Of a stretch of 64,000 bases of DNA, positions 26,541 to 64,000 are shown piece after piece. The notes below the pieces were generated by a model. That model ran no database searches. It saw nothing but the letters and a program-made list of their open reading frames with translations, and was not told the DNA's origin. The translations under genes and the position numbers were made by a program. The stretch's first letter is position 1. Every line of letters starts with the position of its first letter. The DNA comes from Hemiscyllium ocellatum (Eukaryota): NCBI RefSeq assembly GCF_020745735.1, contig NC_083409.1, positions 14,192,760-14,256,759 of the forward strand, written 5' to 3'.

Positions 26541-26589
26541 CTGCGACACAGAATGCCAGGGGCCAGATCAGCTGGATGTGTGAAATCAT
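26541..26589 (-). CDS. IGKV: Leader (signal peptide) exon MISHIQLIWPLAFCVA(G)
   Basis: ATG at 26589; 49 nt; phase-1 donor G|gtacaa; 186-nt intron; splices in frame to the V exon. Confidence 0.93.
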
Positions 26590-26773: not shown

Positions 26774-27250
26774 ATCCTTTCTTTTCTTTCTCCCTTTTCC
26801 CTTTTTTCTCTTTCTCACCCTTCTCTTGTATACGTTCTTGTTATTCGTTGACTTTCTCTCTCTTTTTCTATTTCCGTCTCCGACTCTGTCCTCTCCCAAT
26901 TATATAACCACTTATATCTTTCCTTTTTTCCATGTATGTTTGACATTCTGTTTATCTCCCTCCCTTCTGTTTTGGTTGGTCTCTCTCTCTCTCTCTCTCT
27001 CTGATCATTCATTCTTCTCCTTCACTTATATTACTACCTAATTCCTCACTCATTCTCTCCTTATACCCTCAATCTCTAATTGCCTCACTCTCTCTTTGTT
27101 TCCCTCCCTCCAGTCACTCTCTAGCAGGCATTATTCCAGGACATTGGAACAGTGAGTCCTGGGGCAGCAATTAAATGCCTCGCCCTCTCTCACTCAATCT
27201 CACAATGTACACTTGCTCTCTGTCTCTGTCTGTGTGTGTCTTCTGTGTCT
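26741..27250. repeat. Polypyrimidine / (CT)n-rich low-complexity tract
   Basis: (CT)n runs at about 26746-26773 and 26980-27001, with CT/TCTG-rich flanks. Confidence 0.85.
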
Positions 27251-27329
27251 CTCTCAATCAAAAGTTCAATGACATGAACAGCATTTAACAAGTCTCTACT
27301 GATCATCAATGATCTAGCAACATCAATCC

Positions 27330-27730
27330 CAGCTTGGCATTGAGGGAGAGGATCAGCCATGGTCATATTGAATGGCAGAACAGACTCACAGGGCCAATCC
27401 CTAACCCTTACCCTAACCCTAACCCTAAACCTAACCCTACTCCTGCTCTCTATTTCTATCTTTGTATGTCTGTGTAATCTCCAATCTCTGCCCCTGGATA
27501 TTGATCCCTCTATTCATGGAAAAAGTTGCCTTCCTGTCCACTCTATCCCTGCCTCTCATAATCTTTTTGCCCTTCAGCAGGTTCCCTCTCAACCTTCACT
27601 GCTCCAAGAGAAACAATCCCAAACTTTCCAATCCTTCCTCATAGCTCACACCCTCCAGGCCAGGCAGCATCCTGGGAAATCTTTGCACCATCTCGAGTAC
27701 AGTCATATCTTTCTCATAATATGGTGACCA
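27330..27730 (-). mobile_element. CR1 3' fragment carrying a telomeric-repeat insertion
   Basis: MFWSPYYEKDMTVLEMVQRFPRMLPGLEGVSYEE on the minus strand; CR1 tail motif split by (CCCTAA)n. Confidence 0.8.
27399..27439. repeat. Short interstitial telomeric sequence, about 7 x CCCTAA
   Basis: ccctaa ccctta ccctaa ccctaa ccctaa acctaa cccta. Confidence 0.9.
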
Positions 27731-27739
27731 GAACATCTC

Positions 27740-28008
27740 TGCACGTCTGTCTCTCTCTTTCACTGGATTGCCTCTACTCTTTGTCTCACACCTACTCTGT
27801 CTGTCTCTCTCTCTCTCTGTCCCCTCTCTCTCAGTCACACTGTCTCATACTCTATCTCGCTCTATCTCTATTCTTCAACTCCACCATCTCTACCTCTCTC
27901 TACCTCTCTCTCTCCCCCCGCTTTTACTCATCTTACACTGCCTGAGATTCTTTATCCTGCTCTCTCTCACTTTCACACCCTGCCCTTCTATGTCTCTCTC
28001 GTCAACAT

Positions 28009-28044
<36 letters not shown>

Positions 28045-28050
28045 GCACAC
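27740..28050. repeat. (CT)n/(CA)n-rich low-complexity tract
   Basis: Read directly; ends in (CT)n(CA)n. Confidence 0.85.
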
Positions 28051-28524
28051 TCTCTGCCTTTCCAACAAGGTCCCAAGTGGTAAAAGTTAAATACAGGTTA
28101 TATCTCCTCCAAATCTAATGGATGTTAACCCTTGACACCAGGAGTATGTCTACTCCTGGAATAAAGGCCCATTTCCCACATTGACCAGGGTTTGGCCTCT
28201 CTCAGGAAGACGGTCAGATTCTTGTCAAATGAAGGGCAATTCTGTGCTGTTGGCCCATTCTTCCTGGGGACTGGTTTGGACACAAACCTCATTCCATGAA
28301 AGCCCAGCAGAGGGAGGAGATCCTCAGGCCATCAGTATGACCTGGAGGGATAGGACAGGATCTGACCCATTGACCCATCCTATCCATTCACAACATGTTC
28401 CAATCCTTTCCCCTCACCTTTCCCTTCCATGGTCAAGCTCCAGTTTTATTGGTATGAGGATTGGACCATCACACAGTTACTACAGAAAGGAAATGAGCCC
28501 CACACTCACTACAGTATCCATGTC

Positions 28525-28880
28525 CCACTGGACTGTCCAGTGGAGACCAGTAAGCATGGAATTCATTCCCACAGAACTCTCCAGTAGAGACCATTAAACA
28601 TAGGCATCTTTGCTGCTGGAGCCTCCAATGGAGACCAGTAAATATGGGTCTATTTCCCACTGAATACTCGAGCAGAGCCTAGTTAACATGGACCTTATTC
28701 CTACTGGGCCCTCCAATAGAAACCAGGAGAGAAAGGCCTCCATTTCTTTGAACTCTCCAGTGCAGACCAGTAAATATAGACGAGCTTCAAACTGGCTCCT
28801 CCAATACAGACCAGTAAAGATGTGACTCTTTGTGAATGGATCCTCCAATACAGACCAGTAAACAAGGATCTCATTGCAAG
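28525..28880. repeat. 44-bp-period degenerate tandem array, 8 units
   Basis: GACCAG-type core at 28545, 28589, 28633, 28677, 28721, 28765, 28809 and 28853. Confidence 0.9.
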
Positions 28881-29189
28881 ATTGAACTTCGGAATGAGGA
28901 GCAGGAATAGGTAATCAAACCCGTTTCCTATTTAACATGATCATGGCTGAACTTAACCTCCTCTCCACTTTCCAGACGGCTACCTATTGCCCTCTATCCT
29001 GCTTTTCATCAGAAAGATATCTGTTTCTTTCTTGAATCTGTTGATTGATTCTGCCTCCACTGTGCTTGAGGAAGGGGGTGGGGAGGGGGGGGGGGAGTGG
29101 GGAGGGGGGGTGGAGATGATGGTGCGCACTGACATCCACAGATTCGCAACCTTCTGCGAGAAGTAGTTGGAATGGAACAGATTCCATAC

Positions 29190-29520
29190 AGTATGAAACC
29201 AGGCCATTCAGCCCAATAAGTCCACACCAACCCTTCAAAGAGCATTCCACCCAGAGCCATTCTGGAACCTTTTCCCTGTAACCCTATATTTCCCATGACT
29301 AATGAATCTAACCTACACTTTCCTGGACACTATGGGTAAATTAGCATGGCCAATCCTCTGAACGTGTACATCATTAGACTGTGGGAGGAAATCAGAGCAC
29401 ACAGATGAAGCTCACACAGACAGGGGGAGAATGTGCAAACTCCATGCAGTTGCCTGAGGGTGGAGTCGAACCTGGGGCCCTGGCACTGTGAGGCAGCAGT
29501 GCTCACCACTGCACCACTCT
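29190..29520 (-). mobile_element. HE1-like SINE
   Basis: Minus-strand head gtggtgcagtggtgagcactgctgcctcacag...ggttcgactcc, core and tail. Confidence 0.85.
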
Positions 29521-29529
29521 GTCACCTGT

Positions 29530-29935
29530 AGTTTCTCCTCATCTCAGTTTTAAACATACCTCCTCTCACTCTATGTCTATGACCTCTTGTTCGAGACTGG
29601 CCCACAAGAGAGTACATCTGTTCAATGCTTGCCCTATCAATCTCCTTTAGCATCTTATATACTTCACTCAGATCTCCCCTTCATACAACTGAATTCCAGT
29701 GAGTACAAGCCCTAGCTATTCAACCATTCCTCATATGGCAGCCCTTTCATCCGGGGAATCAGTCTGGTGAACATCCTCTGAACTGAATCCAGTGCCACCA
29801 TATCCTTCACCAAGTAAGGAGACCACAACTGGACACAATGCTTCAGATGTGGTCTCACCAATGCCTAATAGAATTGTCACAATATTTCTTTATTTCTGTA
29901 ATTCAGTCCTTTTATAATAAATACCAAGATTCCAA
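29530..29935 (-). mobile_element. CR1 3' RT fragment
   Basis: Minus strand LVRPHLKHCVQLWSPYLVKD-type sequence. Confidence 0.75.
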
Positions 29936-29959
29936 TTGCTGCAAGAAATGCCAACATTC

Positions 29960-30085
29960 CAATTCCATGGGACTCAATTGGAACCTCCAACAGAGATCAG
30001 GAAACATGGGCCTCCATCCCACTGGAATGTCCAATGGACAGCAATAAGCCTGAGCTTCTTTCCCACTGGACCCTCCAGTATTGGA
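29960..30085. repeat. Continuation of the 44-bp repeat family (about 3 diverged units)
   Basis: cctccaacagagatcaggaaacatgggcctccatcccactgga matches the unit consensus. Confidence 0.7.
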
Positions 30086-30769
30086 GCTTCAAACCCCACT
30101 TCCTCTCCATCACCTAGGTCTCTTATTTCAATCTCCACTACATTGTTTGTCTCTGCACTACATCAGCCCCTTGACCACAGAAACTCTTATTCCTGCTCAT
30201 CCCACCTCCAAACTCCAACATTCTGATGTCCTCTCTCAGCTTACTCCATCTGTGCTCCATAAATTCCAAATTGTCTGGAATGAAATGGCCCCTTCCCTGT
30301 CTCATACCAAGGAGGAGATTGACAGATTTGATTTTAGTAATTAGTTGAAAGTTTACGGAGAGTGGGTGTGGTCAGAATTGGTCAAATTGATGACGGCTCC
30401 TGCAGTTGAATATCCTGCTGGCAGGCTCCAGCCTTTTACACACAGAATGGAGAAGTGTGTATTGTAGGCATATATTGTAAAGTTCCATAGAATTAAACCT
30501 CAGCATCAAATGTCCCTCAGGAGGGGAGAGGGAATGTTCAGGGTCCTGAGCTCCATTTCCCAGCCCAGGCAGTTTGCCTCCCAATGAATGAATGAGATGC
30601 CAGCTTGGAGCCCAGGTTAGGGACAGTCTCTGCTGTGGACCCAAGTCAACAAGAGGCAGCTGGAGATCGAGCTGAAAGGAAAGATTTGCTGGGTTATGGG
30701 GAGAGAGGGGGCAGTGGGAATAATTGGATCACTCACAGACACCACAGGTGGGGGGGGGGGTGCAGGTTT

Positions 30770-31040
30770 AGGACTAAATAGAGAAGGAACTTCTTCACCC
30801 AGAGGGTGGTGAATCTATGGAATTCCCTGCCCAGCGAAGTCGTTGAGGTTTCCTCAGTAAATGTTTTTAAAGCTGATTTAGGTAATTTTTTGAACAGTAA
30901 ATGAATCAAGGGTTTTGGTGAAAAGGTGGATAAGGGGGAGCTGATGCCATGAAAAGATCAGCCATGATCTTACTGAATGGCAGAGCAGCCCAAGAGGCCA
31001 GAGAGCCTGCTCCTGCTCCTGGTTTTAATGTTCTTATGTG
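30770..31040 (+). mobile_element. CR1 3' end
   Basis: aacttcttcacccagagggtggtgaatct...gatcagccatgatcttactgaatggcagagcag...cctgctcctg. Confidence 0.8.
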
Positions 31041-31364
31041 CTGTCAGATTCCAGGGAGTGCAGACAGTTCACAGTTTTCTCCCGTCTCAGTAACAAATGT
31101 GCAGCTGCTCCGAGCTCCTTCTTTCACTTCCTCACTTGGTGAAGTTTCAACCTTGCGATCTGACAGCCTTTGCAGTTATTTTTTACACTGGGGCTTTCTG
31201 CTGTGGTCAGAATCTCTAATAATAAGTGTCCAATCAGTGACAATCACAGCAGCTAAGAGCAGTCAGGACTGAGTAGCCAGGCTCACTGGGAAACACATTG
31301 GGAAGATCAAAGCCATCCCCTTCAGGTCCCGGTACAACCTCCATCCCTCTCCCTGAGCACTGTC

Positions 31365-31615
31365 TGCTGCTCAACCAGACTCTTTACAAAAACAGAATAC
31401 CTCAGCAGGTCTGGCAGCATCTGGGGAAAGAAATCAGAGTTAACATTTCAGGTCGAGTGACCCTTCCTCAGAACAGTTCTGAGAAGGTTCACGTCCCAAA
31501 ATTTTAACTCTGCTTTCTCTCCACAGATGGTGCCAGACCTGCCGAGCTTTTCCAGCAATTTCTGTTTTTGTTCCTCATTTGCAGCATCTGCAGCTTTTTC
31601 GGCTTTTATTTCATA
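31365..31615. mobile_element. Inverted (tail-to-tail) dimer of Penelope pLTR-derived short elements
   Basis: cagcaggtctggcagcatct...cttcctcagaac|agttctgagaagg...agatggtgccagacctgccgag. Confidence 0.7.
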
Positions 31616-31689
31616 CCAGATTCCTTAAAATCTTGGCCTCATCTTTGAGGCTGATCTGAGCCCCAAATCCTCCACAGCACAGAGATCAC

Positions 31690-31990
31690 TCACTGAAAGT
31701 CCCACTCGTTGCTTTGGGACTCCAAACATGACCATTCTAATGTTGTCTTGGGCCACATCACAGCCACTGCCCTCTGTAAACTTCAGCTCACCCCAAAACT
31801 CTGCTGCCCGTATCCGAACTCGCAACAAATCCCATCCCCATCCCCCACCGTCCTCACTGAGCGACATTGGCTCCCGGTCCAATAACACCTCGATTTTCAA
31901 ATTCTCGTCCTTGTTCTGAAGTCCCTCCCTGTCCATCGACCCTCCCCATCTCTGTAACCTCCTCCTAGCTGCCTCACTCAGTGTGGTCAG
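31690..31990 (+). mobile_element. L2-like LINE RT C-terminal fragment
   Basis: ...QNSAARIRTRNKS...IFKF motif, typical of the L2 ORF2 C-terminus. Confidence 0.65.
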
Positions 31991-32229
31991 CAATCTTGGA
32001 TATATGGCTCTCTATTCCTTCATCCAAGTCATTCAGAAATATTATGAAATGCTAAAGTCCCAGGACGGATCCCTGGGCACACCACTATTCACCTCTTGCT
32101 CATTGGAGGACACACACATTATTCCCTCACTCTGTCTCCTATCTCCAAACTAATTCCTAACCCAAGGCAAATGTTTTTTCTCTTATTCAATATGGTTTCA
32201 CGTTGATGAACAATCTCTCAAACAGTGAA

Positions 32230-34640
32230 ACTCGGAGCAGGAATAGGCCATTCAGCCCTTCGAGCCTGTTCTGCCATTCAATATGATCATGGCTGATCAT
32301 CCAACTCAGTTGCCTGTTCCTGCTTCATCCCCATAACCTTTGATCCCTTTCATTCTAAGAACTGTATTGTGCCCTTTCTGGAAAACATTCAGTGGTTTGA
32401 GCTGAACTGCTTTCAGTGACAGAAACGTCTACAGGCTTCCTGTAGAATGAAAATATTTCTCTCCATCTCAGCTCTAAATGTCCTTTCCCGTATCCTTAAA
32501 CTTTAATCCTTGATTCTGGACTCCTTCATCATCAGGAACATCCTGTCTTGTCCTGTTAGGATTCTAGAGTTTTCAGTGTGACTCCCCATAATCTTCTAAC
32601 CTCCAGTGAATATAATCCTAACTGATCCAGTTTCTCATCAGATTTAAGTCTAATTGCTGTCATCCCAGGAGTCAGCCTGGTAAACCTTCGCTGCCCTCCC
32701 TCCACAGCCAGAACATCTTTCCTCAGATAAGTAGACCAAAACTGCACACAATACAATCGTAAAATCGCACAGTACAGAAGAGGCCCTTCGACCCATTGTA
32801 CCTGTACCATCCAAACTACAGTAAACCTGCATTCATCCAAATTTCCAACACAAGGCCCATAGCTTTAAATGTTATGATATTTCAAGGGTTAATCCAAGTA
32901 CTTTTAAAAGTCCTCCTCAACTACCAGCCCAGACAATGCAAACCAGACCCCCACCACCCTCTGGGTGAAAATCTCCTCTTCAAATCCCCTATGAAGCTCC
33001 TGTCTTTCACAGTGAATGTGTGCCAACTCCGAAGAAGAGGAACAACTGCTTTCTATTCATTGTGTCCATTCCCCTCATAGCCGTTTACACCTCTATCAGG
33101 TCCTCTCAACCTTCTCTGCTTCAAAGAAAACAACCCGAGTTTATCCAGCCTCTCTTCATCGCTGAAATGCTTCATCCCAAGCAACATCCTGGTGACTATT
33201 CTCTGCACCCCCTCCAATACAATCCCATCCTTCCGATTGCGTGGTGACCAGAACTGCACACAGTACTCCAGCTGTGGCCTAACAAAAATTCTGAATAGCT
33301 CCAACATATCTTCCCTGGTCTTCTCATCTATACCTGAAATGATAAAGGCTAGTGTCCCATATGATTTCATCAATACTTTATTCACCTGTTACATTGTCCA
33401 AAGTTCATCACCTCACATTTATCAGGGGTAAGTTCCATCTGACTCTGATCTGCCCATCTGACCAATCCAGTTAGATCCTCATGTCACCCAAGACCTTCTT
33501 CCTCATTGTCAACCATCTGCCAAACCTCGTGTCATCCAAAAACTCAGTCATCATCCACTCACCCCCACCCCTCACCTCTCACATTCTCATCTTCATTGTT
33601 TCAATACATCCTGAACAATAAGGGACCCAGCACTGATCCCTGTGGTATCCCACTGCACACTGGGCCCAGTCACATAAACAAATTTCTGCCTCCACCCTCT
33701 GTCTCCTGTCACTGAACCAGTTTTGGTTTGAATATTCAGGAGTGGACTCACTAAGGCCCCATACAATTACAGCAAGACATCCCTGTTCCTGTACGCAAAT
33801 TCTCTCACTATAAAGGTAACATATCATTTACCTTCTGCACTGCCTGCTGCACCTACACGCTGACTTTCAGTGACTGGTATACACGGACACAGGCATCTCT
33901 GCATCTTCTTCACTGCTCCCCCTCCCACCCAGCTTTGTGTCATCTGCAAATTGGAGATATTACTCTTAAGTTCCCTCATCTAAACCATGAACAAATATGA
34001 ACATTACTGACATGAATAGAGAAGTGGTTGGCAGGCTGGAAACAAAGAGTAAAAAAAACAGACCTTTTTCTGAAAAGGTCTGTTTTTTTTTTACTCTTTG
34101 TTTCCAGCCTGCCAACCACTTCTCTATCCATGTCAGTACACTGCCCCAGTCCATTGAGTCTTACTTTTACTCGCTAATTTCTACTGTGGGACTGTTTAAA
34201 AGCCTTCTGAAGGTTCCAGATAAACCACATCCGTTGGCTCCCCCTTGTCAAATCTGCTCATTCCATCCTCGAACAATTCCAGTCAATTTGTTCTGCATGA
34301 TTTCCCTTTCCACAAACCATGCTGACTCTGTCTAATCCTATCACTGTCTTCCACGTGCCCAGTGATTAAATCTTTCACAACGAACTTGACTATTTTTCCC
34401 AATACCAATGTCGGCTGACTGGTCCAGGTTGCCCACTTTTCTCTCTCCCTCCCATTTTAAACAGTGATGTTACATTCGCAACTCTCCAGTCACTGGGAAA
34501 GTTCCAGAATCAATAGAATCTTGAACACCAATGTTCCCAAAATTTTTGGGCAATTCCTGAAGTAATCTGAAATGTAGGTTATTGGTCCCTGCGGATTTAT
34601 CAAACTTTAATCCCATAAATTTTCCAAAACCATTTCCCGA
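32230..34640 (-). mobile_element. Mosaic of CR1 RT/3' fragments
   Basis: FVRPQLEYCVQFWSPRNRKD, LYCVQFWSTYLRKD and WIEKWLAGWKQRV motifs. Confidence 0.85.
34005..34138. repeat. 134-bp near-perfect hairpin (about 64-66-bp arms, 4-nt loop TCTG)
   Basis: tactgacatgaatagagaag...cagacctttt tctg aaaaggtctg...cttctctatccatgtcagta; one substitution and an 8A/10T run difference. Confidence 0.95.
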
Positions 34641-34989
34641 ATAAAACTAATTTTCTTCAGTTCTGCCCTCAGTCTATACCCTGACGTCCCAACATGTTTC
34701 AAATGGATTTGAGTTTTCCTTTGTGTACAAAGATCCAGAATGCAGCAAAGGCAGAAATTTCCTTGTCAGCTTTTGTCAGCGATACTTGTCAATATACTTT
34801 CATCAAATCAATTTTCAATAGGAATGACACACTACCCACCATTTCAATGCAATCTTCTGACCTGGGAATAGGTTACAAATCCATCTTTGTGACTACATTC
34901 ACTTTCCTATAGTGTACACAGAATCGAATTGAAACATCTGGCTGAGTCACCAAACAAGAGAACTCCAACTACTCTTAACAGTTCAATCA

Positions 34990-35486
34990 GGGGACCCTCT
35001 CTTGTTTGTGATCAGTAATTTGCTGATTTTTAGGTGGTTTGAATCACCCCAGATCCCTGGTTCCACAAATGGGCTGATTTAAAACTGTGAAATTAAGAAG
35101 GCAATAGACAGGTGTTTCAGGGCAAAAGAATCTCTGTGTTTATTCAGAACAGGCCTGTGTCTGGAAGCTCTTGTTCAGATAGCGTTTGGTTGGTGTTCCT
35201 GCTCTCGGGTGTCCTTTGTTACGATGATGCTCTTGGTTTGGTGTCTGGATTCAGCTTCTCTGTTCAGCCTCTGTAGTTGTTGGTTCTAAAGCTGCTTGTT
35301 GGTAGTGTGTGTTAGTAGGCCGAGGTTGTAAAAGTTAGTTTTAGTCAAGAGATTGTGTTCTGGTTGGTGTCCCTTTCAGAGTTGAGGTGTGAACTGGAAT
35401 TCCAGGCAGAACAATAGTTCCAGGCAGCCATTTTTTACAAAAAATCCAGGGTTTTAGATGATAGTGACTTTTGCTCAATCCTACAC
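34990..35486 (-). mobile_element. LTR-like segment between 35/36-bp direct repeats
   Basis: Minus strand begins tgtagga and contains AATAAA; flanked by acaagagaactccaa...ttcaatca at 34954 and 35485. Confidence 0.3.
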
Positions 35487-35689
35487 AAGAGAACTCCAAT
35501 TACGCTGACAATTCAATCAATTGATTCTCCAACATGAATTGAGCTTCATTTGTTACTTTGACTTATTTCTCTGGTTTTAATCAAAATGGATTTTGTTTTA
35601 TTGGGTCTGAATAACCTACATCCACATCATGTTCGATTAATCTGGGACACCTAAGTGTATCTTTTAAAGACCATGTATCAGTGTAGAGT

Positions 35690-36070
35690 TAGGCCATTCA
35701 GCCCATCACGTCTGCCCTGCCATTCGATCATAATTGATTTGTTTGTCAACCCCATACTCCTGCCTTTTCTCCATTACCCTTGATCCCTTTACCAATCAAG
35801 AATCCATCTATCTCTGTCTTAAATACACTCAATGACTTGGCCTCCACAGCATTCTGCAGCAATGATTAATCCACAGATTAACCACTCTCTGGATGAAAAA
35901 TCTCCTCATCTCAGTTCCAAAGGATGGTCCCTTCACTCTGAAGCTGTGCCCTCAGTCTCTCTGCCAAGTGGAAACATCTTCTCCATGTCTACTCTATCCA
36001 GGCCTCTCAGTATACAGTATGTTTCACTGAGATTGCCCCTCATCCTTCCAAACTCCATCAAGTACAGACT
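35690..36070 (-). mobile_element. CR1 3' end
   Basis: MRGNLSETYCILRGLDRVDMEKMFPL and CR1 tail. Confidence 0.8.
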
Positions 36071-36429
36071 GAATACTGGCTCCAACCACTCCTCAGACAA
36101 ACTTCTTTGTATTCTCTGAGCAATCTCACTCTGTCCCTCTGTTGATCTTCCTCCAGATGCAAAAATACAGTGTCTGAATTCTCTAATATCTCTGAATTTG
36201 TTCACCTCATAGGAGGAAGTTCACTTTGGAAATTGTCCAATTGCCTTTGGATCTCATGCTTTTTCTCATCCCCTCCTCCATTATACTCACTACTTGACAC
36301 ACCTGTACACGACTGAATGGTTCCTCAAAAACTGAGAGAGGAATTAAGGATGCTGGTTCAATCACATGTTGAGGTTTACCTATAACTTGACAAGTGTTTT
36401 TAAAAAATTATTCATTTTGTGTAATGTGA

Positions 36430-37800: not shown

Positions 37801-38249
37801 ATTCTGGATGCCTGTGGACAATTGGACAATTTCCAAATCCCCACGGTCCTGTCATGGAAATCTGATGTGCTCCTCACGATATCTCCCTGTGATAGCTGGA
37901 TGGTACCACGAGCCAATATCTAACCAACCATTCTTCATCTGGGGGTCCATGGAGGGACGGTGGTGGGGGGGCGGTCTCCACTTCCTCATCAGTGCTCCAT
38001 TCTGAAGATAATAGCATTCTGAAACCCCTCCAGCCTCGACCTCAGTCTGAACTGACAGTGCTCATTTATTTCATTCGGGATCTGCTTTTTGGATCTGCTG
38101 TAATTAGGGACATCATACCAACCACTCCACCTGGATTGTCTTCACCCTTTTGGAAAGTTTCAGCGATCCTTTCACTTGCTGTGATGTCACATCAACCCTT
38201 ATTGATGGATTTTGTTTAACCATTGCTCTGGTTACCTCACACGAAGGAG

Positions 38250-39550: not shown

Positions 39551-39554
39551 CATA

Positions 39555-41135: not shown

Positions 41136-41144
41136 ACCCAGTAA

Positions 41145-46489: not shown

Positions 46490-46689
46490 NNNNNNNNNNN
46501 NNNNNNNNNNNNNNNNNNNNNNNNNNNNNNNNNNNNNNNNNNNNNNNNNNNNNNNNNNNNNNNNNNNNNNNNNNNNNNNNNNNNNNNNNNNNNNNNNNNN
46601 NNNNNNNNNNNNNNNNNNNNNNNNNNNNNNNNNNNNNNNNNNNNNNNNNNNNNNNNNNNNNNNNNNNNNNNNNNNNNNNNNNNNNNNNN
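46490..46689. other. Assembly gap of 200 N
   Basis: Run of n; the round length suggests a scaffolding or curation placeholder. Confidence 0.99.
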
Positions 46690-52750: not shown

Positions 52751-55700
52751 TCGTGTGAGGTAACCAGAGCAATGGTTAAACAAAATCCATCAATAAGGGT
52801 TGATGTGACATCACAGCAAGTGAAAGGATCGCTGAAACTTTCCAAAAGGGTGAAGATAATCCAGGTGGAGTGGTTGGTATGATGTCCCTAATTACAGCAG
52901 ATCCAAAAAGCAGATCCCGAATGAAATAAATGAGCACTGTCAGTTCATACTGAGGTCGAGGCTGGAGGGGTTTCAGAATGCTATTATCTTCAGAATGGAG
53001 CACTGATGAGGAAGTGGAGACCGCCCCTCCACCACCGTCCCTCCATGGACCCCCAGATGAAGAATGGTTGGTTAGATATTGGCTCGTGGTACCATCCAGC
53101 TATCACAGGGAGATATCGTGAGGAGCACATCAGATTTCCATGACAGGACCGTGGGGATTTGGAAATTGTCCAATTGTCCACAGGCATCCAGAATCAGGTG
53201 TTTTATTGAGCCAAAATTATATAAAGATGTGGCACAGTTTTATAAATGTAACATACTTGAACTCATTTTTACCAATCTGCCAGCTGCAGATGCTTCTGTC
53301 CACGAAAGTACCAGTAAGGGTGACCACCGCACAGTCCTTGTGAAGACCAACACCCGCCTTCATTGAGAATAGCCTCCATCGTGTTGTGTGGCACTTTCAC
53401 GAGACTAACTGGGACAGACTTACAACCAATCTCACAACTCATGACTGGGCATCCATGAAGTACTGTGGGCCATCAACAGCAGCAGAATTGTGCTCCAGCC
53501 CCGACACGACCATTATCATCAAACCAGGGAATCAACACTAGTTCAATGGAGAATTCAGGAGGTCGTACCAGGAGCAGCACCAGTCATTCATCAAGATGAG
53601 GTATTCCTGCATTCCTGATGAAGGGTTTTTGCCCGAAAGGTCAATTTTACTGCTCCTCGGATGCTGCCTGAACTGCTGTGCTTTTCCAGCACCACTCTAA
53701 TCTAGACTCTGGTTTCCAGCATCTGCAGTCATTGTTTTTACCAAGATGAGGTATTTACCTGGTGAAACCACCAAACATGACTACTCGCATAGCAAGCAGC
53801 ACAAGCAGCAATTGACAGACAGTATTAGACAACACACAACCAATGGATCAGGTCTAAGCTCTGCAGCCCTGTCACATCCAGTCATGAGTACTGGTAGACG
53901 ATTAAACATCTCACTGGATGAGCGGGCTCCACACAAATATCCCCACCCTCAATGATGGAAGAGTCCAACACATCAGGGCAAAAGATAAGGCTGAAGCTTT
54001 TGCAGAAATCCTCAGCTAGAAGTCCTGAGTGGATGATCCATCTTGGCCTCCTCCAGTGGTCCTCAGCATTAAAGATAACCATCTTCAGTCAATTTGATTC
54101 ACTCCACGTGTTATCAAGAAATGGGTGGAGGCACTGGGTACTGCAAAGGCTATGGACCCTGACAACATTCTGGTAATAATACTGAAGACTTGTGCTCCAG
54201 AACTTGTCACTTCCCTAGCCAAGCTGTTCCAGGAAAGCTATAACACTAGCATCTGCCCGACAATGTGGATAATTGCCCAACAATGTCCTATACATAAAAA
54301 GCAGGACAAATCCAAGCTAGCCAGTTACCGCCCCATCAGTCTCCTCTCGGTCATTAGCGAAGTGAGGGAATGTGTCATCAACAGCACCTGCTCAGCAATA
54401 ACCTGCTCAGTGATGCCCAGTTTGGGTTCCACCAGGGTCACTCAGCTCCTGGCTTCATTACAGATTGGTTCAAACGTGGACAAAAGAGTTGAATTAGGGA
54501 TGAGCAATAAATGCTGGCCTTGGGCAACTGGGGATAAGCAACAAATGCAGGCCAGCCAGTGATGCTCACATTACACAAAATGAATAATTTTTTAAAAACA
54601 CTTGTCAAGTTATAGGTAAACCTCAACATGTGATTGAACCAGCATCCTTAATTCCTCTCTCAGTTTTTGAGGAACCATTCAGTCGTGTACAGGTGTGTCA
54701 AGTAGTGAGTATAATGGAGGAGGGGATGAGAAAAAGCATGAGATCCAAAGGCAATTGGACAATTTCCAAAGTGAACTTCCTCCTATGAGGTGAACAAATT
54801 CAGAGATATTAGAGAATTCAGACACTGTATTTTTGCATCTGGAGGAAGATCAACAGAGGGACAGAGTGAGATTGCTCAGAGAATACAAAGAAGTTTGTCT
54901 GAGGAGTGGTTGGAGCCAGTATTCAGTCTGTACTTGATGGAGTTTGGAAGGATGAGGGGCAATCTCAGTGAAACATACTGTATACTGAGAGGCCTGGATA
55001 GAGTAGACATGGAGAAGATGTTTCCACTTGGCAGAGAGACTGAGGGCACAGCCTCAGAGTGAAGGGACCATCCTTTGGAACTGAGATGAGGAGGAGATTT
55101 TTCATCCAGAGAGTGGTTAATCTGTGGATTAATCATTGCTGCAGAATGCTGTGGAGGCCAAGTCATTGAGTGTATTTAAGACAGAGATAGATGGATTCTT
55201 GATTGGTAAAGGGATCAAGGGTAATGGAGAAAAGGCAGGAGATTGGGGTTGACAAACAAATCAATTATGATCGAATGGCAGGGCAGACGTGATGGGCTGA
55301 ATGGCCTAACTCTACACTGATACATGGTCTTTAGAAGATACACTTAGGTGTCCCAGATTAATCGAACATGATGTGGATGTAGGTTATTCAGACCCAGTAA
55401 AACAAAATCCATTTTGATTAAAACCAGAGAAATAAGTCAAAGTAACAAATGAAGCTCAATTCATGTTGGAGAATCAATTGATTGAATTGTCAGCGTAATT
55501 GGAGTTCTCTTGTGTAGGATTGAGCAAAAGTCACTATCATCTAAAACCCTGGATTTTTTGTAAAAAATGGCTGCCTGGAACTATTGTTCTGCCTGGAATT
55601 CCAGTTCACACTTCAACTCTGAAAGGGACACCAACCAGAACACAATCTCTTGACTAAAACTAACTTTTACAACCTCGGCCTACTAACACACACTACCAAC

Positions 55701-56861
55701 AAGCAGCTTTAGAACCAACAACTACAGAGGCTGAACAGAGAAGCTGAATCCAGACACCAAACCAAGAGCATCATCGTAACAAAGGACACCCGAGAGCAGG
55801 AACACCAACCAAACGCTATCTGAACAAGAGCTTCCAGACACAGGCCTGTTCTGAATAAACACAGAGATTCTTTTGCCCTGAAACACCTGTCTATTGCCTT
55901 CTTAATTTCACAGTTTTAAATCAGCCCATTTGTGGAACCAGGGATCTGGGGATGATTCAAACCACCTAAAAATCAGCAAATTACTGATCACAAACAAGAG
56001 AGGGTCCCCTGATTGAACTGTTAAGAGTAGTTGGAGTTCTCTTGTTTGGTGACTCAGCCAGATGTTTCAATTCGATTCTGTGTACACTATAGGAAAGTGA
56101 ATGTAGTCACAAAGATGGATTTGTAACCTATTCCCAGGTCAGAAGATTGCATTGAAATGGTGGGTAGTGTGTCATTCCTATTGAAAATTGATTGGATGAA
56201 AGTATATTGACAAGTATCGCTGACAAAAGCTGACAAGGAAATTTCTGCCTTTGCTGCATTCTGGATCTTTGTACACAAAGGAAAACTCAAATCCATTTGA
56301 AACATGTTGGGACGTCAGGGTATAGACTGAGGGCAGAACTGAAGAAAATTAGTTTTATTCGGGAAATGGTTTTGGAAAATTTATGGGATTAAAGTTTGAT
56401 AAATCCGCAGGGACCAATAACCTACATTTCAGATTACTTCAGGAATTGCCCAAAAATTTTGGGAACATTGGTGTTCAAGATTCTATTGATTCTGGAACTT
56501 TCCCAGTGACTGGAGAGTTGCGAATGTAACATCACTGTTTAAAATGGGAGGGAGAGAGAAAAGTGGGCAACCTGGACCAGTCAGCCTGGCATTGGTATTG
56601 GGAAAAATAGTCAAGTTCGTTGTGAAAGATTTAATCACTGGGCACGTGGAAGACAGTGATAGGATTAGACAGAGTCAGCATGGTTTGTGGAAAGGGAAAT
56701 CATGCAGAACAAATTGACTGGAATTGTTCGAGGATGGAATGAGCAGATTTGACAAGGGGGAGCCAACGGATGTGGTTTATCTGGAACCTTCAGAAGGCTT
56801 TTAAACAGTCCCACAGTAGAAATTAGCGAGTAAAAGTAAGACTCAATGGACTGGGGCAGTG

Positions 56862-56994
56862 TACTGACATGGATAGAGAAGTGGTTGGCAGGCTGGAAAC
56901 AAAGAGTAAAAAAAAACAGACCTTTTCAGAAAAAGGTCTGTTTTTTTTACTCTTTGTTTCCAGCCTGCCAACCACTTCTCTATTCATGTCAGTA
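56862..56994. repeat. Mirror copy of the fold-back hairpin
   Basis: tactgacatggatagagaag...ccttttcagaaaaagg...cttctctattcatgtcagta. Confidence 0.93.
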
Positions 56995-59900
56995 ATGTTC
57001 ATATTTGTTCATGGTTTAGATGAGGGAACTTAAGAGTAATATCTCCAATTTGCAGATGACACAAAGCTGGGTGGGAGGGGGAGCAGTGAAGAAGATGCAG
57101 AGATGCCTGTGTCCGTGTATACCAGTCACTGAAAGTCAGCGTGTAGGTGCAGCAGGCAGTGCAGAAGGTAAATGATATGTTACCTTTATAGTGAGAGAAT
57201 TTGCGTACAGGAACAGGGATGTCTTGCTGTAATTGTATGGGGCCTTAGTGAGTCCACTCCTGAATATTCAAACCAAAACTGGTTCAGTGACAGGAGACAG
57301 AGGGTGGAGGCAGAAATTTGTTTATGTGACTGGGCCCAGTGTGCAGTGGGATACCACAGGGATCAGTGCTGGGTCCCTTATTGTTCAGGATGTATTGAAA
57401 CAATGAAGATGAGAATGTGAGAGGTGAGGGGTGGGGGTGAGTGGATGATGACTGAGTTTTTGGATGACACGAGGTTTGGCAGATGGTTGACAATGAGGAA
57501 GAAGGTCTTGGGTGACACGAGGATCTAACTGGATTGGTCAGATGGGCAGATCAGAGTCAGATGGAACTTACCCCTGATAAATGTGAGGTGATGAACTTTG
57601 GACAATGTAACAGGTGAATAAAGTATTGATGAAATCATATGGGACACTTGCCTTTATCATTTCAGGTATAGATGAGAAGACCAGGGAAGATATGTTGGAG
57701 CTATTCAGAATTTTTGTTAGGCCACAGCTGGAGTACTGTGTGCAGTTCTGGTCACCACGCAATCGGAAGGATGGGATTGTATTGGAGGGGGTGCAGAGAA
57801 TAGTCACCAGGATGTTGCTTGGGATGAAGCATTTCAGCGATGAAGAGAGGCTGGATAAACTCGGGTTGTTTTCTTTGAAGCAGAGAAGGTTGAGAGGACC
57901 TGATAGAGGTGTAAACGGCTATGAGGGGAATGGACACAATGAATAGAAAGCAGTTGTTCCTCTTCTTCGGAGTTGGCACACATTCACTGTGAAAGACAGG
58001 AGCTTCATAGGGGATTTGAAGAGGAGATTTTCACCCAGAGGGTGGTGGGGGTCTGGTTTGCATTGTCTGGGCTGGTAGTTGAGGAGGACTTTTAAAAGTA
58101 CTTGGATTAACCCTTGAAATATCATAACATTTAAAGCTATGGGCCTTGTGTTGGAAATTTGGATGAATGCAGGTTTACTGTAGTTTGGATGGTACAGGTA
58201 CAATGGGTCGAAGGGCCTCTTCTGTACTGTGCGATTTTACGATTGTATTGTGTGCAGTTTTGGTCTACTTATCTGAGGAAAGATGTTCTGGCTGTGGAGG
58301 GAGGGCAGCGAAGGTTTACCAGGCTGACTCCTGGGATGACAGCAATTAGACTTAGATCTGATGAGAAACTGGACCAGTTAGGATTATATTCACTGGAGGT
58401 TAGAAGATTATGGGGAGTCACACTGAAAACTCTAGAATCCTAACAGGACAAGACAGGATGTTCCTGATGACGAAGGAGTCCAGAATCAAGGATTAAAGTT
58501 TAAGGATACGGGAAAGGACATTTAGAGCTGAGATGGAGAGAAATATTTTCATTCTACAGGAAGCCTGTAGACGTTTCTGTCACTGAAAGCAGTTCAGCTC
58601 AAACCACTGAATGTTTTCCAGAAAGGGCACAATACAGTTCTTAGAATGAAAGGGATCAAAGGTTATGGGGATGAAGCAGGAACAGGCAGCTGAGTTGGAT
58701 GATCAGCCATGATCATATTGAATGGCAGAACAGGCTCGAAGGGCTGAATGGCCTATTCCTGCTCCGAGTTTCACTGTTTGAGAGATTGTTCATCAACGTG
58801 GAACCATATTGAATAAGAGAAAAAACATTTGCCTTGGGTTAGGAATTAGTTTGGAGATAGGAGACAGAGTGAGGGAATAATGTGTGTGTCCTCAAATGAG
58901 CAAGAGGTGAATAGTGGTGTGCCCAGGGATCCGTCCTGGGACTTTAGCATTTCATAATATTTCTGAATGACTTGGATGAAGGAATAGAGAGCCATATATC
59001 CAAGATTGCTGACCACACTGAGTGAGGCAGCTAGGAGGAGGTTACAGAGATGGGGAGGGTCGATGGACAGGGAGGGACTTCAGAACAAGGACGAGAATTT
59101 GAAAATCGAGGTGTTATTGGACCGGGAGCCAATGTCGCTCAGTGAGGACAGTGGGGGATGGGGATGGGATTTGTTGCGAGTTCGGATTCGGGCAGCAGAG
59201 TTTTGGTGTGAGCTGAAGTTTACAGAGGGCAGTGGCTGTGATGTGGCCCAAGACAACATTAGAATGGTCATGTTTGGAGTCCCAAAGCAACGAGTGGGAC
59301 TTTCAGTGAGTGATCTCTGTGCTGTGGAGGATTTGGGGCTCAGATCAGCCTCAAAGATGAGGCCAAGATTTTAAGGAATCTGGTATGAAATAAAAGCCGA
59401 AAAAGCTGCAGATGCTGCAAATGAGGAACAAAAACAGAAATTGCTGGAAAAGCTCGGCAGGTCTGGCACCATCTGTGGAGAGAAAGCAGAGTTAAAATTT
59501 TGGGACGTGAACCTTCTCAGAACTGTTCTGAGGAAGGGTCACTCGACCTGAAAGGTTAACTCTGATTTCTTTCCCCAGATGCTGCCAGACCTGCTGAGGT
59601 ATTCTGTTTTTGTAAAGAGTCTGGTTGAGCAGCAGACAGTGCTCAGGGAGAGGGATGGAGGTTGTACCGGGACCTGAAGGGGATGGCTTTGATCTTCCCA
59701 ATGTGTTTCCCAGTGAGCCTGGCTACTCAGTCCTGACTGCTCTTAGCTGCTGTGATTGTCACTGATTGGACACTTATTATTAGAGATTCTGACCACAGCA
59801 GAAAGCCCCAGTGTAAAAAATAACTGCAAAGGCTGTCAGATCGCAAGGTTGAAACTTCACCAAGTGAGGAAGTGAAAGAAGGAGCTCGGAGCAGCTGCAC

Positions 59901-62122
59901 ATTTGTTACTGAGACGGGAGAAAACTGTGAACTGTCTGCACTCCCTGGAATCTGACAGCACATAAGAACATTAAAACCAGGAGCAGGAGCAGGCTCTCTG
60001 GCCTCTTGGGCTGCTCTGCCATTCAGTAAGATCATGGCTGATCTTTTCATGGCATCAGCTCCCCCTTATCCACCTTTTCACCAAAACCCTTGATTCATTT
60101 ACTGTTCAAAAAATTACCTAAATCAGCTTTAAAAACATTTACTGAGGAAACCTCAACGACTTCGCTGGGCAGGGAATTCCATAGATTCACCACCCTCTGG
60201 GTGAAGAAGTTCCTTCTCTATTTAGTCCTAAACCTGCACCCCCCCCCCCCCCCGCACCTGTGGTGTCTGTGAGTGATCCAATTATTCCCACTGCCCCCTC
60301 TCTCCCCATAACCCAGCAAATCTTTCCTTTCAGCTCGATCTCCAGCTGCCTCTTGTTGACTTGGGTCCACAGCAGAGACTGTCCCTAACCTGGGCTCCAA
60401 GCTGGCATCTCATTCATTCATTGGGAGGCAAACTGCCTGGGCTGGGAAATGGAGCTCAGGACCCTGAACATTCCCTCTCCCCTCCTGAGGGACATTTGAT
60501 GCTGAGGTTTAATTCTATGGAACTTTACAATATATGCCTACAATACACACTTCTCCATTCTGTGTGTAAAAGGCTGGAGCCTGCCAGCAGGATATTCAAC
60601 TGCAGGAGCCGTCATCAATTTGACCAATTCTGACCACACCCACTCTCCGTAAACTTTCAACTAATTACTAAAATCAAATCTGTCAATCTCCTCCTTGGTA
60701 TGAGACAGGGAAGGGGCCATTTCATTCCAGACAATTTGGAATTTATGGAGCACAGATGGAGTAAGCTGAGAGAGGACATCAGAATGTTGGAGTTTGGAGG
60801 TGGGATGAGCAGGAATAAGAGTTTCTGTGGTCAAGGGGCTGATGTAGTGCAGAGACAAACAATGTAGTGGAGATTGAAATAAGAGACCTAGGTGATGGAG
60901 AGGAAGTGGGGTTTGAAGCTCCAATACTGGAGGGTCCAGTGGGAAAGAAGCTCAGGCTTATTGCTGTCCATTGGACATTCCAGTGGGATGGAGGCCCATG
61001 TTTCCTGATCTCTGTTGGAGGTTCCAATTGAGTCCCATGGAATTGGAATGTTGGCATTTCTTGCAGCAATTGGAATCTTGGTATTTATTATAAAAGGACT
61101 GAATTACAGAAATAAAGAAATATTGTGACAATTCTATTAGGCATTGGTGAGACCACATCTGAAGCATTGTGTCCAGTTGTGGTCTCCTTACTTGGTGAAG
61201 GATATGGTGGCACTGGATTCAGTTCAGAGGATGTTCACCAGACTGATTCCCCGGATGAAAGGGCTGCCATATGAGGAATGGTTGAATAGCTAGGGCTTGT
61301 ACTCACTGGAATTCAGTTGTATGAAGGGGAGATCTGAGTGAAGTATATAAGATGCTAAAGGAGATTGATAGGGCAAGCATTGAACAGATGTACTCTCTTG
61401 TGGGCCAGTCTCGAACAAGAGGTCATAGACATAGAGTGAGAGGAGGTATGTTTAAAACTGAGATGAGGAGAAACTACAGGTGACAGAGTGGTGCAGTGGT
61501 GAGCACTGCTGCCTCACAGTGCCAGGGCCCCAGGTTCGACTCCACCCTCAGGCAACTGCATGGAGTTTGCACATTCTCCCCCTGTCTGTGTGAGCTTCAT
61601 CTGTGTGCTCTGATTTCCTCCCACAGTCTAATGATGTACACGTTCAGAGGATTGGCCATGCTAATTTACCCATAGTGTCCAGGAAAGTGTAGGTTAGATT
61701 CATTAGTCATGGGAAATATAGGGTTACAGGGAAAAGGTTCCAGAATGGCTCTGGGTGGAATGCTCTTTGAAGGGTTGGTGTGGACTTATTGGGCTGAATG
61801 GCCTGGTTTCATACTGTATGGAATCTGTTCCATTCCAACTACTTCTCGCAGAAGGTTGCGAATCTGTGGATGTCAGTGCGCACCATCATCTCCACCCCCC
61901 CTCCCCACTCCCCCCCCCTCCCCACCCCCTTCCTCAAGCACAGTGGAGGCAGAATCAATCAACAGATTCAAGAAAGAAACAGATATCTTTCTGATGAAAA
62001 GCAGGATAGAGGGCAATAGGTAGCCGTCTGGAAAGTGGAGAGGAGGTTAAGTTCAGCCATGATCATGTTAAATAGGAAACGGGTTTGATTACCTATTCCT
62101 GCTCCTCATTCCGAAGTTCAAT

Positions 62123-62478
62123 CTTGCAATGAGATCCTTGTTTACTGGTCTGTATTGGAGGATCCATTCACAAAGAGTCACATCTTTACTGGTCTGTATT
62201 GGAGGAGCCAGTTTGAAGCTCGTCTATATTTACTGGTCTGCACTGGAGAGTTCAAAGAAATGGAGGCCTTTCTCTCCTGGTTTCTATTGGAGGGCCCAGT
62301 AGGAATAAGGTCCATGTTAACTAGGCTCTGCTCGAGTATTCAGTGGGAAATAGATCCATATTTACTGGTCTCCATTGGAGGCTCCAGCGGCAAAGATGCC
62401 TATGTTTAATGGTCTCTACTGGAGAGTTCTGTGGGAATGAATTCCATGCTTACTGGTCTCCACTGGACAGTCCAGTGG
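62123..62478. repeat. Mirror copy of the 44-bp array
   Basis: tttactggtctgtattggagg units. Confidence 0.88.
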
Positions 62479-62958
62479 GACATGGATACTGTAGTGAGTG
62501 TGGGGCTCATTTCCTTTCTGTAGTAACTGTGTGATGGTCCAATCCTCATACCAATAAAACTGGAGCTTGACCATGGAAGGGAAAGGTGAGGGGAAAGGAT
62601 TGGAACATGTTGTGAATGGATAGGATGGGTCAATGGGTCAGATCCTGTCCTATCCCTCCAGGTCATACTGATGGCCTGAGGATCTCCTCCCTCTGCTGGG
62701 CTTTCATGGAATGAGGTTTGTGTCCAAACCAGTCCCCAGGAAGAATGGGCCAACAGCACAGAATTGCCCTTCATTTGACAAGAATCTGACCGTCTTCCTG
62801 AGAGAGGCCAAACCCTGGTCAATGTGGGAAATGGGCCTTTATTCCAGGAGTAGACATACTCCTGGTGTCAAGGGTTAACATCCATTAGATTTGGAGGAGA
62901 TATAACCTGTATTTAACTTTTACCACTTGGGACCTTGTTGGAAAGGCAGAGAGTGTGC

Positions 62959-62994
<36 letters not shown>

Positions 62995-63563
62995 ATGTTG
63001 ACGAGAGAGACATAGAAGGGCAGGGTGTGAAAGTGAGAGAGAGCAGGATAAAGAATCTCAGGCAGTGTAAGATGAGTAAAAGCGGGGGGAGAGAGAGAGG
63101 TAGAGAGAGGTAGAGATGGTGGAGTTGAAGAATAGAGATAGAGCGAGATAGAGTATGAGACAGTGTGACTGAGAGAGAGGGGACAGAGAGAGAGACAGAC
63201 AGACAGAGTAGGTGTGAGACAAAGAGTAGAGGCAATCCAGTGAAAGAGAGAGACAGACGTGCAGAGATGTTCTGGTCACCATATTATGAGAAAGATATGA
63301 CTGTACTCGAGATGGTGCAAAGATTTCCCAGGATGCTGCCTGGCCTGGAGGGTGTGAGCTATGAGGAAGGATTGGAAAGTTTGGGATTGTTTCTCTTGGA
63401 GCAGTGAAGGTTGAGAGGGAACCTGCTGAAGGGCAAAAAGATTATGAGAGGCAGGGATAGAGTGGACAGGAAGGCAACTTTTTCCATGAATAGAGGGATC
63501 AATATCCAGGGACAGAGATTGGAGATTACACAGACATACAAAGATAGAAATAGAGAGCAGGAG

Positions 63564-63604
63564 TAGGGTTAGGTTTAGGGTTAGGGTTAGGGTTAGGGTT
63601 AGGG
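63564..63604. repeat. Mirror copy of interstitial telomeric array (TTAGGG)n
   Basis: tagggttaggtttagggttagggttagggttagggttaggg. Confidence 0.9.
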
Positions 63605-64000
63605 ATTGGCCCTGTGAGTCTGTTCTGCCATTCAATATGACCATGGCTGATCCTCTCCCTCAATGCCAAGCTGGGATTGATGTTGCTAGATCATTGATGA
63701 TCAGTAGAGACTTGTTAAATGCTGTTCATGTCATTGAACTTTTGATTGAGAGAGACACAGAAGACACACACAGACAGAGAGAGAGAGCAAGTGGACATTG
63801 TGAGATTGAGTGAGAGAGGGCGAGGCATTTAATTGCTGCCCCAGGACTCACTGTTCCAATGTCCTGGAATAATGCCTGCTAGAGAGTGACTGGAGGGAGG
63901 GAAACAGACAAAGAGAGAGTGAGGCAATTAGAGATTGAGGGTATAAGGAGAGAATGAGTGAGGAATTAGGTAGTAATATAAGTGAAGGAGAAGAATGAAT

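What the first reader, a model, noticed from the sequence alone, without database searches (positions are those of the whole stretch)
27007..64000. Giant palindrome (arms at least 17.3 kb) predicting a mirror-image kappa cluster just beyond the window
Seen: 27007-44273 is the reverse complement of 46690-64000, about 99% identical by eye, separated by 2216 bp of unique spacer plus a 200-N gap. The mirror is still running at the window edge, about 420 bp short of the mirrored leader ATG (expected near 64420; V about 64650-64960; J about 65460-65490). Inference A: a recent inverted segmental duplication giving divergent twin Ig clusters, possibly homogenised by arm-to-arm gene conversion. Inference B: two haplotypes of one region scaffolded head-to-head. 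B is favoured by the right arm starting exactly at a round-number gap and by allele-level divergence. The sequence alone cannot decide.
Basis: partly seen in the sequence, partly recalled or inferred. Interest (0 to 1): 0.72.

Follow-up and report, generated by a model that had tools for sequence, protein, structure and literature searches.

The report
Mirror-image repeat beside shark kappa gene
A 17-kb stretch upstream of a shark antibody light-chain gene appears twice, as mirror images on either side of an assembly gap; public reads suggest the sequence really is multi-copy, but the head-to-head layout is unproven.

Summary
27007-44273 is the reverse complement of 46690-64000: 99.25% identity, 68 substitutions, 22 indels. 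The match runs to the window end on one side and to the first base after the 200-N gap on the other.

The "unique spacer" (44274-46489) is LINE debris. The right contig simply stops inside a repeat, so the true centre is not assembled.

Many arm differences look like consensus errors. Transitions are too few, many 1-base indels lie outside homopolymers, and 10 differences sit in the 200 nt next to the gap. Some differences are real, because both states occur in public runs.

An earlier scan note names the epaulette shark. Its reference is a trio-binned paternal haplotype (CLR reads, purge_dups, curated), which makes a retained allele less likely. In Logan contigs of three samples, arm pieces and spacer pieces have equal word depth (1:1, not 2:1). 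That depth is about 4-7 times that of diverged paralog contigs.

My odds:
- real young duplicate in inverted order: 0.45
- real copy, but join or orientation wrong: 0.25
- false duplication: 0.25

The intact kappa V-J-C unit at 26589-13345 (-) makes the predicted twin plausible, but it cannot be checked from this window. Either way the finding is ordinary.

The parts
27007..44273 (.). Left arm: non-coding region 0.4 to 17.7 kb upstream of the kappa leader
   Evidence: Self-blastn and MAFFT walk. The eight longest ORFs carry no Pfam domain.
44274..46489 (.). Inner segment present only on the left contig (the 'spacer'). It holds LINE-like fragments, with a roughly 160-nt insert at about 44473-44640 and a weak esterase-like ORF1 remnant at 45970-46353.
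   Evidence: 74-78% matches to other copies in the window. Word depth reaches 1e6 over 44290-45490, and many contigs skip 154-171 nt there. Pfam hits are below cut-off. The unique pieces 45452-45757 and 45988-46124 have the same depth as arm pieces.
46490..46689 (.). 200-N scaffold gap. It was not filled or looked up.
46690..64000 (.). Right arm: reverse complement of the left arm. It begins at the first base after the gap and is still running at the window end.
   Evidence: There are 10 differences in its first 200 nt (Poisson p 2e-7).
28649..31444 (.). 2,797-nt tract with no substitution between the arms (mirror about 59555-62354)
   Evidence: Simulation gives p = 0.0004.
26022..26589 (-). 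Kappa-type leader exon (26589-26541), V exon (26354-26050) and 12-spacer RSS (26049-26022)
   Evidence: Read from the sequence. V-set domain, E = 1.3e-16.
25516..25589 (-). 23-spacer RSS (25589-25551) and J segment (25550-25516), followed by a GTAAGT splice donor
13345..13673 (-). Light-chain C exon including the stop codon. The J-C intron is about 11.8 kb.
   Evidence: C1-set domain, E = 1e-22.

Best explanation
The mirror most likely reflects a real, very young duplicate of a kappa minilocus and its roughly 20-kb upstream region. The two copies lie head-to-head, like the older inverted pairs that earlier scan notes report elsewhere in this array. Shown: the mirror itself; that the right contig stops mid-repeat at the gap; that the arm and 'spacer' pieces have equal word depth; that this depth is several times that of diverged paralog contigs; and that some arm differences exist in real reads. 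Inferred: the duplicated unit extends through the 'spacer' into the gap, so the real centre is unassembled. A noisy-long-read assembler would be expected to break there, since it cannot tell 99.6%-identical 20-kb arms apart. About half of the 90 differences would then be unpolished consensus errors, because polishing reads multi-map between copies. If the arrangement is real, the two clusters are twin V-J-C units that each rearrange within themselves. The arms would be kept alike either by their youth or by arm-to-arm gene conversion.
For: Depth (Logan contigs):
- X1: arm pieces 46.2 and 64.5, boundary piece 49.3, spacer piece 58.3.
- X19: arm pieces 71.5 and 82.1, boundary 85.6, spacer 80.1.
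- X22: arm pieces 205-462, spacer pieces 204-264.
- Contigs of roughly 93%-identical paralogs in the same runs have depth 11.9-12.7 (X1), 16.1-21.6 (X19) and 40.5 (X22).

Expected depth: PMC10587355 gives 49-82x per offspring and 113-135x per parent for a 3.98-Gb genome. S1 has at least 4 runs and S11 at least 3. Single-copy word depth per run should then be about 10-35, well below what the arms show.

Assembly method: the same paper says the reference is a TrioCanu paternal haplotype that was purged with purge_dups and curated. PMC9516828 notes that the trio pipeline removes more allelic duplicates.

Real differences between the arms:
- At 42462/42470 the left arm has the outgroup state, while all three samples mainly carry the right-arm state (a substitution plus a 10-bp insertion).
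- The right-arm insertions at 41023 and 43345 occur in X1 and X22 but not in X19.
- A third version of 42681-43059 occurs in X1 and X19 at higher depth than the arm contigs, so more copies exist than the two assembled.

Context: earlier notes s1-228448 and s1-203492 report head-to-head kappa pairs and a large inverted duplication elsewhere in the array. I did not test these.
Against: - No molecule spanning the gap was seen. Only short contigs (100-400 nt) were available, and no strand-changing joint was listed.
- The pair is hinged on a scaffold gap and the right arm starts at its first base. That is one of the hallmarks of false duplication (PMC9516828).
- The arm-to-spacer depth ratio is 1:1, not the 2:1 expected of a palindrome with a single-copy spacer.
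- Divergence is at allele level: 0.39% against pi of 0.2%.
- The extra word depth could come from other close paralogs of this roughly 200-copy family rather than from the right arm itself.
- The depth calibration rests on three or four low-depth contigs. It also assumes that the coded runs are the data sets of the cited paper.
Confidence: 0.45

Rival explanations
1. False duplication. The right contig is a redundant assembly of the same locus. It is either the maternal allele mis-binned into the paternal read set, or an under-collapsed contig of the same haplotype. It escaped purging and was parked next to its twin in arbitrary orientation by linked-read, Hi-C or manual scaffolding.
For: - There is a gap exactly at the arm start, one of the four hallmarks in PMC9516828.
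- Both contigs end within 2.2 kb of the same point in the unit.
- Divergence is near pi.
- Ts:Tv is 32:36, against about 1.4 for contig-to-stretch differences (p = 0.03).
- More than ten 1-base indels lie outside homopolymers.
- Ten differences fall in the first 200 nt of the right contig.
- No run's contigs show the left-arm letters at 41401, 44217 and 46453, or the right-arm insertion at 44208.
- Arm-to-spacer depth is 1:1.
- First-reader notes report other near-identical duplications at 13-N gaps in this assembly (unverified).
Against: - The assembly is a trio-binned paternal haplotype that was purged and curated, which makes an allelic duplicate less likely.
- Arm word depth is several times the expected single-copy depth, not half of it.
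- The 42462/42470 difference restores the outgroup state. It is therefore not a consensus error, which rules out a pure same-haplotype duplicate.
Confidence: 0.25
2. The copy is real but the layout is wrong. The right contig is a genuine near-identical paralog from this multi-copy family. Its place or orientation next to the left contig is a scaffolding choice, so the true neighbour arrangement could be tandem or more distant, and copies may be collapsed.
For: - Word depth suggests about 4 or more copies per haploid genome in some samples, while only two are assembled here.
- A third sequence version exists in the reads.
- The join is a 200-N gap of unknown true size.
- The assembly was built from 50x noisy CLR reads, which cannot separate copies that are 99.6% identical.
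Against: Alternating orientation is said to be the normal layout of this array (notes s1-228448, s1-203492, s1-198110). The tail-to-tail C-exon remnant at 569-861 in this window fits that pattern. Curators normally orient contigs on Hi-C evidence.
Confidence: 0.25

Closest known systems
Large sex-chromosome palindromes of primates (PMC8327919)
   Same: Inverted arms longer than 8 kb with over 99% arm identity, a gene copy in each arm, and an unstable, hard-to-assemble centre. The palindromes in that paper have arms of 8-140 kb and spacers of 77 bp to 358 kb.
   Different: This one is autosomal, lies in an antibody gene array, and is only 99.25% identical (less once errors are counted). The centre is not assembled, no spanning molecule was seen, and arm-to-arm conversion is not shown.
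False duplications in vertebrate assemblies (PMC9516828)
   Same: A near-identical pair on one scaffold, hinged on a gap, with allele-level divergence, in an assembly made by the same pipeline family.
   Different: That paper names haploid-level or lower depth as a primary characteristic. Here the indirect word depth is high rather than low. The assembly was also trio-binned.
Human IGK locus: proximal V cluster and distal duplicated V cluster (PMC7555362)
   Same: A kappa locus that carries a large duplicated block of V genes. From my own knowledge, the distal block is inverted.
   Different: The human duplication covers hundreds of kb of V genes that share one J-C cluster, with 800 kb between the blocks. 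Here a whole V-J-C minilocus would be duplicated, about 38 kb leader to leader.
Other head-to-head and tail-to-tail kappa minilocus pairs in this genome (scan notes s1-228448, s1-203492, s1-198110)
   Same: The same gene family, the same alternating orientation, and a similar spacing (about 28 kb in one note).
   Different: Those pairs are described as old and decayed. In this window the tail-to-tail pair keeps only 294 nt at 92%. The pair studied here is 99.25% identical over at least 17.3 kb.

Membership tests
Large palindrome (ampliconic inverted repeat) | Inverted arms of at least 8 kb with at least 99% identity | tested here: met
   At least 17.3 kb at 99.25% identity. Thresholds follow PMC8327919.
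Large palindrome (ampliconic inverted repeat) | Both arms and the centre are shown on one molecule | tested here: inconclusive
   Only 100-400-nt Logan contigs were available. No strand-changing joint was listed. The centre lies in or beyond the 200-N gap.
Large palindrome (ampliconic inverted repeat) | Arms at twice the depth of the spacer and flanks | tested here: not met
   Arm and spacer pieces have equal word depth in X1 and X19, and a ratio of about 1.4 in X22. This also fits a palindrome whose arms include the 'spacer'.
Large palindrome (ampliconic inverted repeat) | Arm-to-arm gene conversion | tested here: inconclusive
   A 2,797-nt tract has no substitution (p = 0.0004). A shared-ancestry tract between alleles would look the same.
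False duplication (Ko et al. 2022) | A gap lies between the duplicated pair on the same scaffold | tested here: met
   The 200-N gap is at 46490-46689 and the right arm starts at 46690.
False duplication (Ko et al. 2022) | Haploid-level or lower read depth on the copies | tested here: inconclusive
   No raw reads were available. Contig word depth of the arms is 4-7 times that of paralog contigs, and above the depth expected from published coverage. This points away from half depth, but other paralogs may contribute.
False duplication (Ko et al. 2022) | Haplotype-specific one-copy k-mers, or discordant linked reads | not testable with these tools
   This needs the parental and 10x raw reads mapped to both haplotype assemblies.
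Cartilaginous-fish kappa-type light-chain cluster | Leader and V exon with a 12-spacer RSS, J with a 23-spacer RSS about 0.5 kb away, and one C exon downstream | tested here: met
   Sequence read. V-set and C1-set domains. All frames are open, the RSS heptamers and nonamers are canonical, and the J donor is GTAAGT.

The most novel reading that the evidence does not exclude
The two arms are a true palindrome kept alike by ongoing arm-to-arm gene conversion. Shark light-chain miniloci would then evolve in concert as mirror-image twins, and copy number would differ between individuals of one family (arm depth relative to paralog contigs is higher in sample S12 than in S1 or S11).
Probability: 0.15. 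Interest if true: 0.5.

Novelty: new member of a known kind. Interest (0 to 1): 0.25.

Why it matters
If real, this is the youngest inverted pair seen so far in a roughly 200-copy shark kappa array. It would show how the array grows or is homogenised, and it would add one functional light-chain unit. If false, one annotated kappa cluster just beyond the window is a phantom, and gene counts for this family are inflated. The practical lesson holds either way. Near-identical copies next to gaps in this noisy-long-read assembly carry unpolished errors and unproven joins, so they should not be used for copy counts or divergence dating without read-level checks.

Tried and rejected
- Raw-read depth could not be obtained. 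All 22 runs are kept only as Logan contigs, so depth is one figure per contig and minor variants may be dropped.
- The first call to the look-up of sequencing runs did not complete.
- I considered arguing from the agreement of the three samples at arm-difference sites. I dropped it, because agreement is trivial wherever one arm's letter is a consensus error, and the listed rows are pre-selected.
- Contigs that skip the insert in the LINE region were rejected as depth calibrators. Sequencing errors in a repeat with 1e6 word depth can produce contigs of any depth.
- No fold-back exists inside 44274-46489, and the gap flanks do not overlap.
- No tandem repeat was found near the centre.
- The arm ORFs gave no Pfam hit, and the LINE pieces gave only sub-threshold hits.
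- The PDB search confirmed an Ig constant domain but did not separate kappa from lambda.
- A findings look-up around my place returned nothing. A word search for depth notes found nothing.
- A literature search on 13-bp Bionano gaps found nothing.
- Two reference calls failed on coordinate order and were resent.
- I did not use the second run search. Without another read-laying run it could not add depth or spanning evidence.
Full report
**The observation**

The window has one N run, 46490-46689. Self-blastn finds a single large match: 46690-64000 against 44273-27007 on the opposite strand, at 99.249% identity over 17,320 columns. A MAFFT walk counts 68 substitutions and 22 indels, 62 indel bases in all.

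The match ends at the window edge on the outside and at the first base after the gap on the inside. The last difference is at 44217/46746, and the final 56 bases are identical. So the 17.3 kb is a lower bound at both ends.

**What sits around it**

On the minus strand, just left of the arm, lies an intact unrearranged light-chain unit:
- leader ATG at 26589-26587, with a GT donor after 26541
- V exon 26354-26050 (V-set, E = 1.3e-16)
- canonical 12-spacer signal CACAGTG-12-ACAAAAACC at 26049-26022
- 23-spacer signal GGTTTTTGT-23-CACTGTG at 25589-25551
- J 25550-25516, followed by GTAAGT
- C exon 13673-13345 (C1-set, E = 1e-22)

V with a 12-spacer signal and J with a 23-spacer signal is the kappa-type layout.

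The arms themselves are non-coding. The eight longest ORFs have no Pfam domain. A 3' fragment of a second C exon lies at 569-861 on the plus strand, 92% identical to 13433-13141. It is the remnant of an old tail-to-tail partner, and nothing else of that pair still aligns.

**The gap and the 'spacer'**

The two sides of the gap neither overlap nor continue each other. No frame crosses the gap.

The segment 44274-46489 is repeat debris:
- 44635-45488 matches other LINE-like copies in the window at 74-78%.
- Word depth over 44290-45490 reaches about 1e6 in every run, and many contigs skip a 154-171-nt insert near 44473-44640.
- 45970-46353 has only sub-threshold esterase-like hits.

Position 44273 is not a natural boundary. 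Contigs from all four runs bridge 44273/44274 (records 7, 15, 22 and 32). So the right contig just stops. I laid reads only on the N-free left side and did not try to read the gap.

**The nature of the 90 differences**

- Transitions and transversions stand at 32:36. Differences between the stretch and public contigs have a ratio of about 1.4. The transition deficit gives p = 0.03.
- More than ten 1-base indels lie outside homopolymers.
- Ten differences fall in the 200 nt next to the gap (Poisson p = 2e-7), as expected of a poorly supported contig end.
- In one search, no run's contigs show the left-arm letters at 41401, 44217 and 46453, or the right-arm insertion at 44208.

Roughly half of the differences are therefore probably consensus errors.

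Others are real. At 42462/42470 the left arm has the state of the related species (run X5), while all three samples of this species mainly carry the right-arm state. The right-arm insertions at 41023 and 43345 occur in X1 and X22 but not in X19.

A 2,797-nt tract (28649-31444) has no substitution at all (p = 0.0004). That fits either a gene-conversion tract or shared ancestry between alleles.

**Reads**

Only Logan contigs exist for the 22 runs found, so true depth and spanning reads were out of reach. Contig word depths still give two results.

First, arm pieces and unique 'spacer' pieces are equal:

| Run | Arm pieces | Boundary piece | Spacer pieces |
|---|---|---|---|
| X1 | 46.2, 64.5 | 49.3 | 58.3 |
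| X19 | 71.5, 82.1 | 85.6 | 80.1 |
| X22 | 205-462 | 285.7 | 204-264 |

A palindrome with a single-copy spacer predicts 2:1. That version is not supported.

Second, contigs of roughly 93%-identical paralogs in the same runs have depth 11.9-12.7 (X1), 16.1-21.6 (X19) and 40.5 (X22). That is four to seven times lower than the arm pieces.

**Which genome**

An earlier scan note (s1-228461) names the epaulette shark. I did not verify this independently. The paper on that genome (PMC10587355) states:
- The reference is the paternal haplotype of a trio.
- It was assembled with TrioCanu on 50x CLR reads and purged with purge_dups.
- It was scaffolded with scaff10x, Bionano and Salsa2, polished, and curated.
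- The genome is 3.98 Gb.
- The parents were sequenced to 113-135x and nine offspring to 49-82x.
- pi is 0.002 and the mutation rate is 7e-10 per generation.

If the coded runs are those data, the per-run single-copy word depth should be about 10-35, because sample S1 has at least four runs and S11 at least three. That agrees with the low-depth paralog contigs. It puts the arms and the spacer pieces at two to four or more times single copy.

A third version of 42681-43059 differs from both arms by three substitutions and an 8-nt indel. It is the only version laid in X1 and X19, at higher depth than the arm contigs. So more copies exist than the two assembled.

**Weighing the readings**

For false duplication:
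- The pair is hinged on a gap, one of the four hallmarks in PMC9516828.
- Divergence is allele-level.
- The contig end is error-rich.
- Arm-to-spacer depth is 1:1.
- First-reader notes report other near-identical duplications at 13-N gaps in this assembly (unverified).

Against it:
- Trio binning, purging and curation make allelic duplicates less likely.
- The arms are deeper than single copy, not shallower.
- At least one difference restores the ancestral state, so the pair is not one haplotype assembled twice.

The depth argument has a weakness. Other close paralogs of this roughly 200-copy family could supply the extra depth.

Alternating orientation of clusters is reported as normal in this array (s1-228448, s1-203492, s1-198110), and the tail-to-tail remnant in this window fits that. 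A head-to-head twin at this spot is therefore plausible.

My odds:
- real young duplicate in inverted order, centre unassembled: 0.45
- real copy, but place or orientation unproven: 0.25
- false duplication: 0.25

**Age, if real**

A divergence of 0.0039 gives at most about 2.8 million generations at the published rate, or about half that if half of the differences are errors. The related species' contigs differ from the stretch by about 5%: 50 differences in 998 aligned letters (table 8).

**Comparison with known things**

The structure resembles large primate sex-chromosome palindromes (PMC8327919). It also resembles the duplicated V block of the human kappa locus (PMC7555362). It equally meets one hallmark of assembly false duplications (PMC9516828).

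Under any of the three readings it is a member of a known kind. The practical value is a warning about gene counts and divergence dates for near-identical Ig clusters beside gaps in this assembly.

Noticed in passing
window 569-861 (+) and 13141-13433 (-): A 3' fragment of a second light-chain C exon (last 25 or so codons, stop and 3' UTR) lies tail-to-tail with the intact C exon, 92% identical over 294 nt. Nothing else between them still aligns. It looks like the remnant of an old, oppositely oriented cluster.
   Followed up: partly
window 31122-31131 (-), mirror 59868-59877 (+); also 39387-39396 (-) / 51598-51607 (+): An exact GGAAGTGAAA (an ETS/IRF composite-like motif) lies 4.5 kb upstream of the leader, inside the 2.8-kb tract that has no arm substitutions. 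The motif count in the whole window is only marginally above chance (9 against 4.65 expected).
   Followed up: partly
window 42681-43059: Public-run contigs (X1, X19) carry a third version here. It differs from both arms by 3 substitutions (42837, 42879, 42924) and an 8-nt indel, and has higher word depth than the arm contigs. This is evidence for further close copies that are not assembled in this window.
   Followed up: partly
window 41245-41401: Eight arm differences fall in 157 nt (5%), far above the 0.5% average. A low-depth contig in X1 (41197-41376) differs from the left arm at 11 places here. This may be a patch copied from, or mixed with, another paralog.
   Followed up: no
window 44473-44640: A 154-171-nt insert sits inside the LINE-like fragment. 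Many other genomic copies lack it, since dozens of contigs in all four runs skip it. It looks like a short mobile element nested in the LINE.
   Followed up: no
window 34005-34138 and 56862-56994: Each arm holds a 133-nt stretch that is its own reverse complement at about 94%. It is a small internal hairpin-forming repeat.
   Followed up: no
window 46205-46220: A run of about 15 G lies 270 nt before the left contig's end. The assembly letter at 46453 is not seen in the contigs of any run that covers the site: X1 and X22 show only C there, and X19 and X5 have no contig at that place. The end of the left contig is also of doubtful quality.
   Followed up: no
window 26690-26700 (-): No perfect octamer (ATTTGCAT) lies upstream of the leader. 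The nearest candidate is ATTTACAT, about 110 nt before the ATG, with a TTTATAAAG box about 50 nt upstream of the ATG.
   Followed up: no
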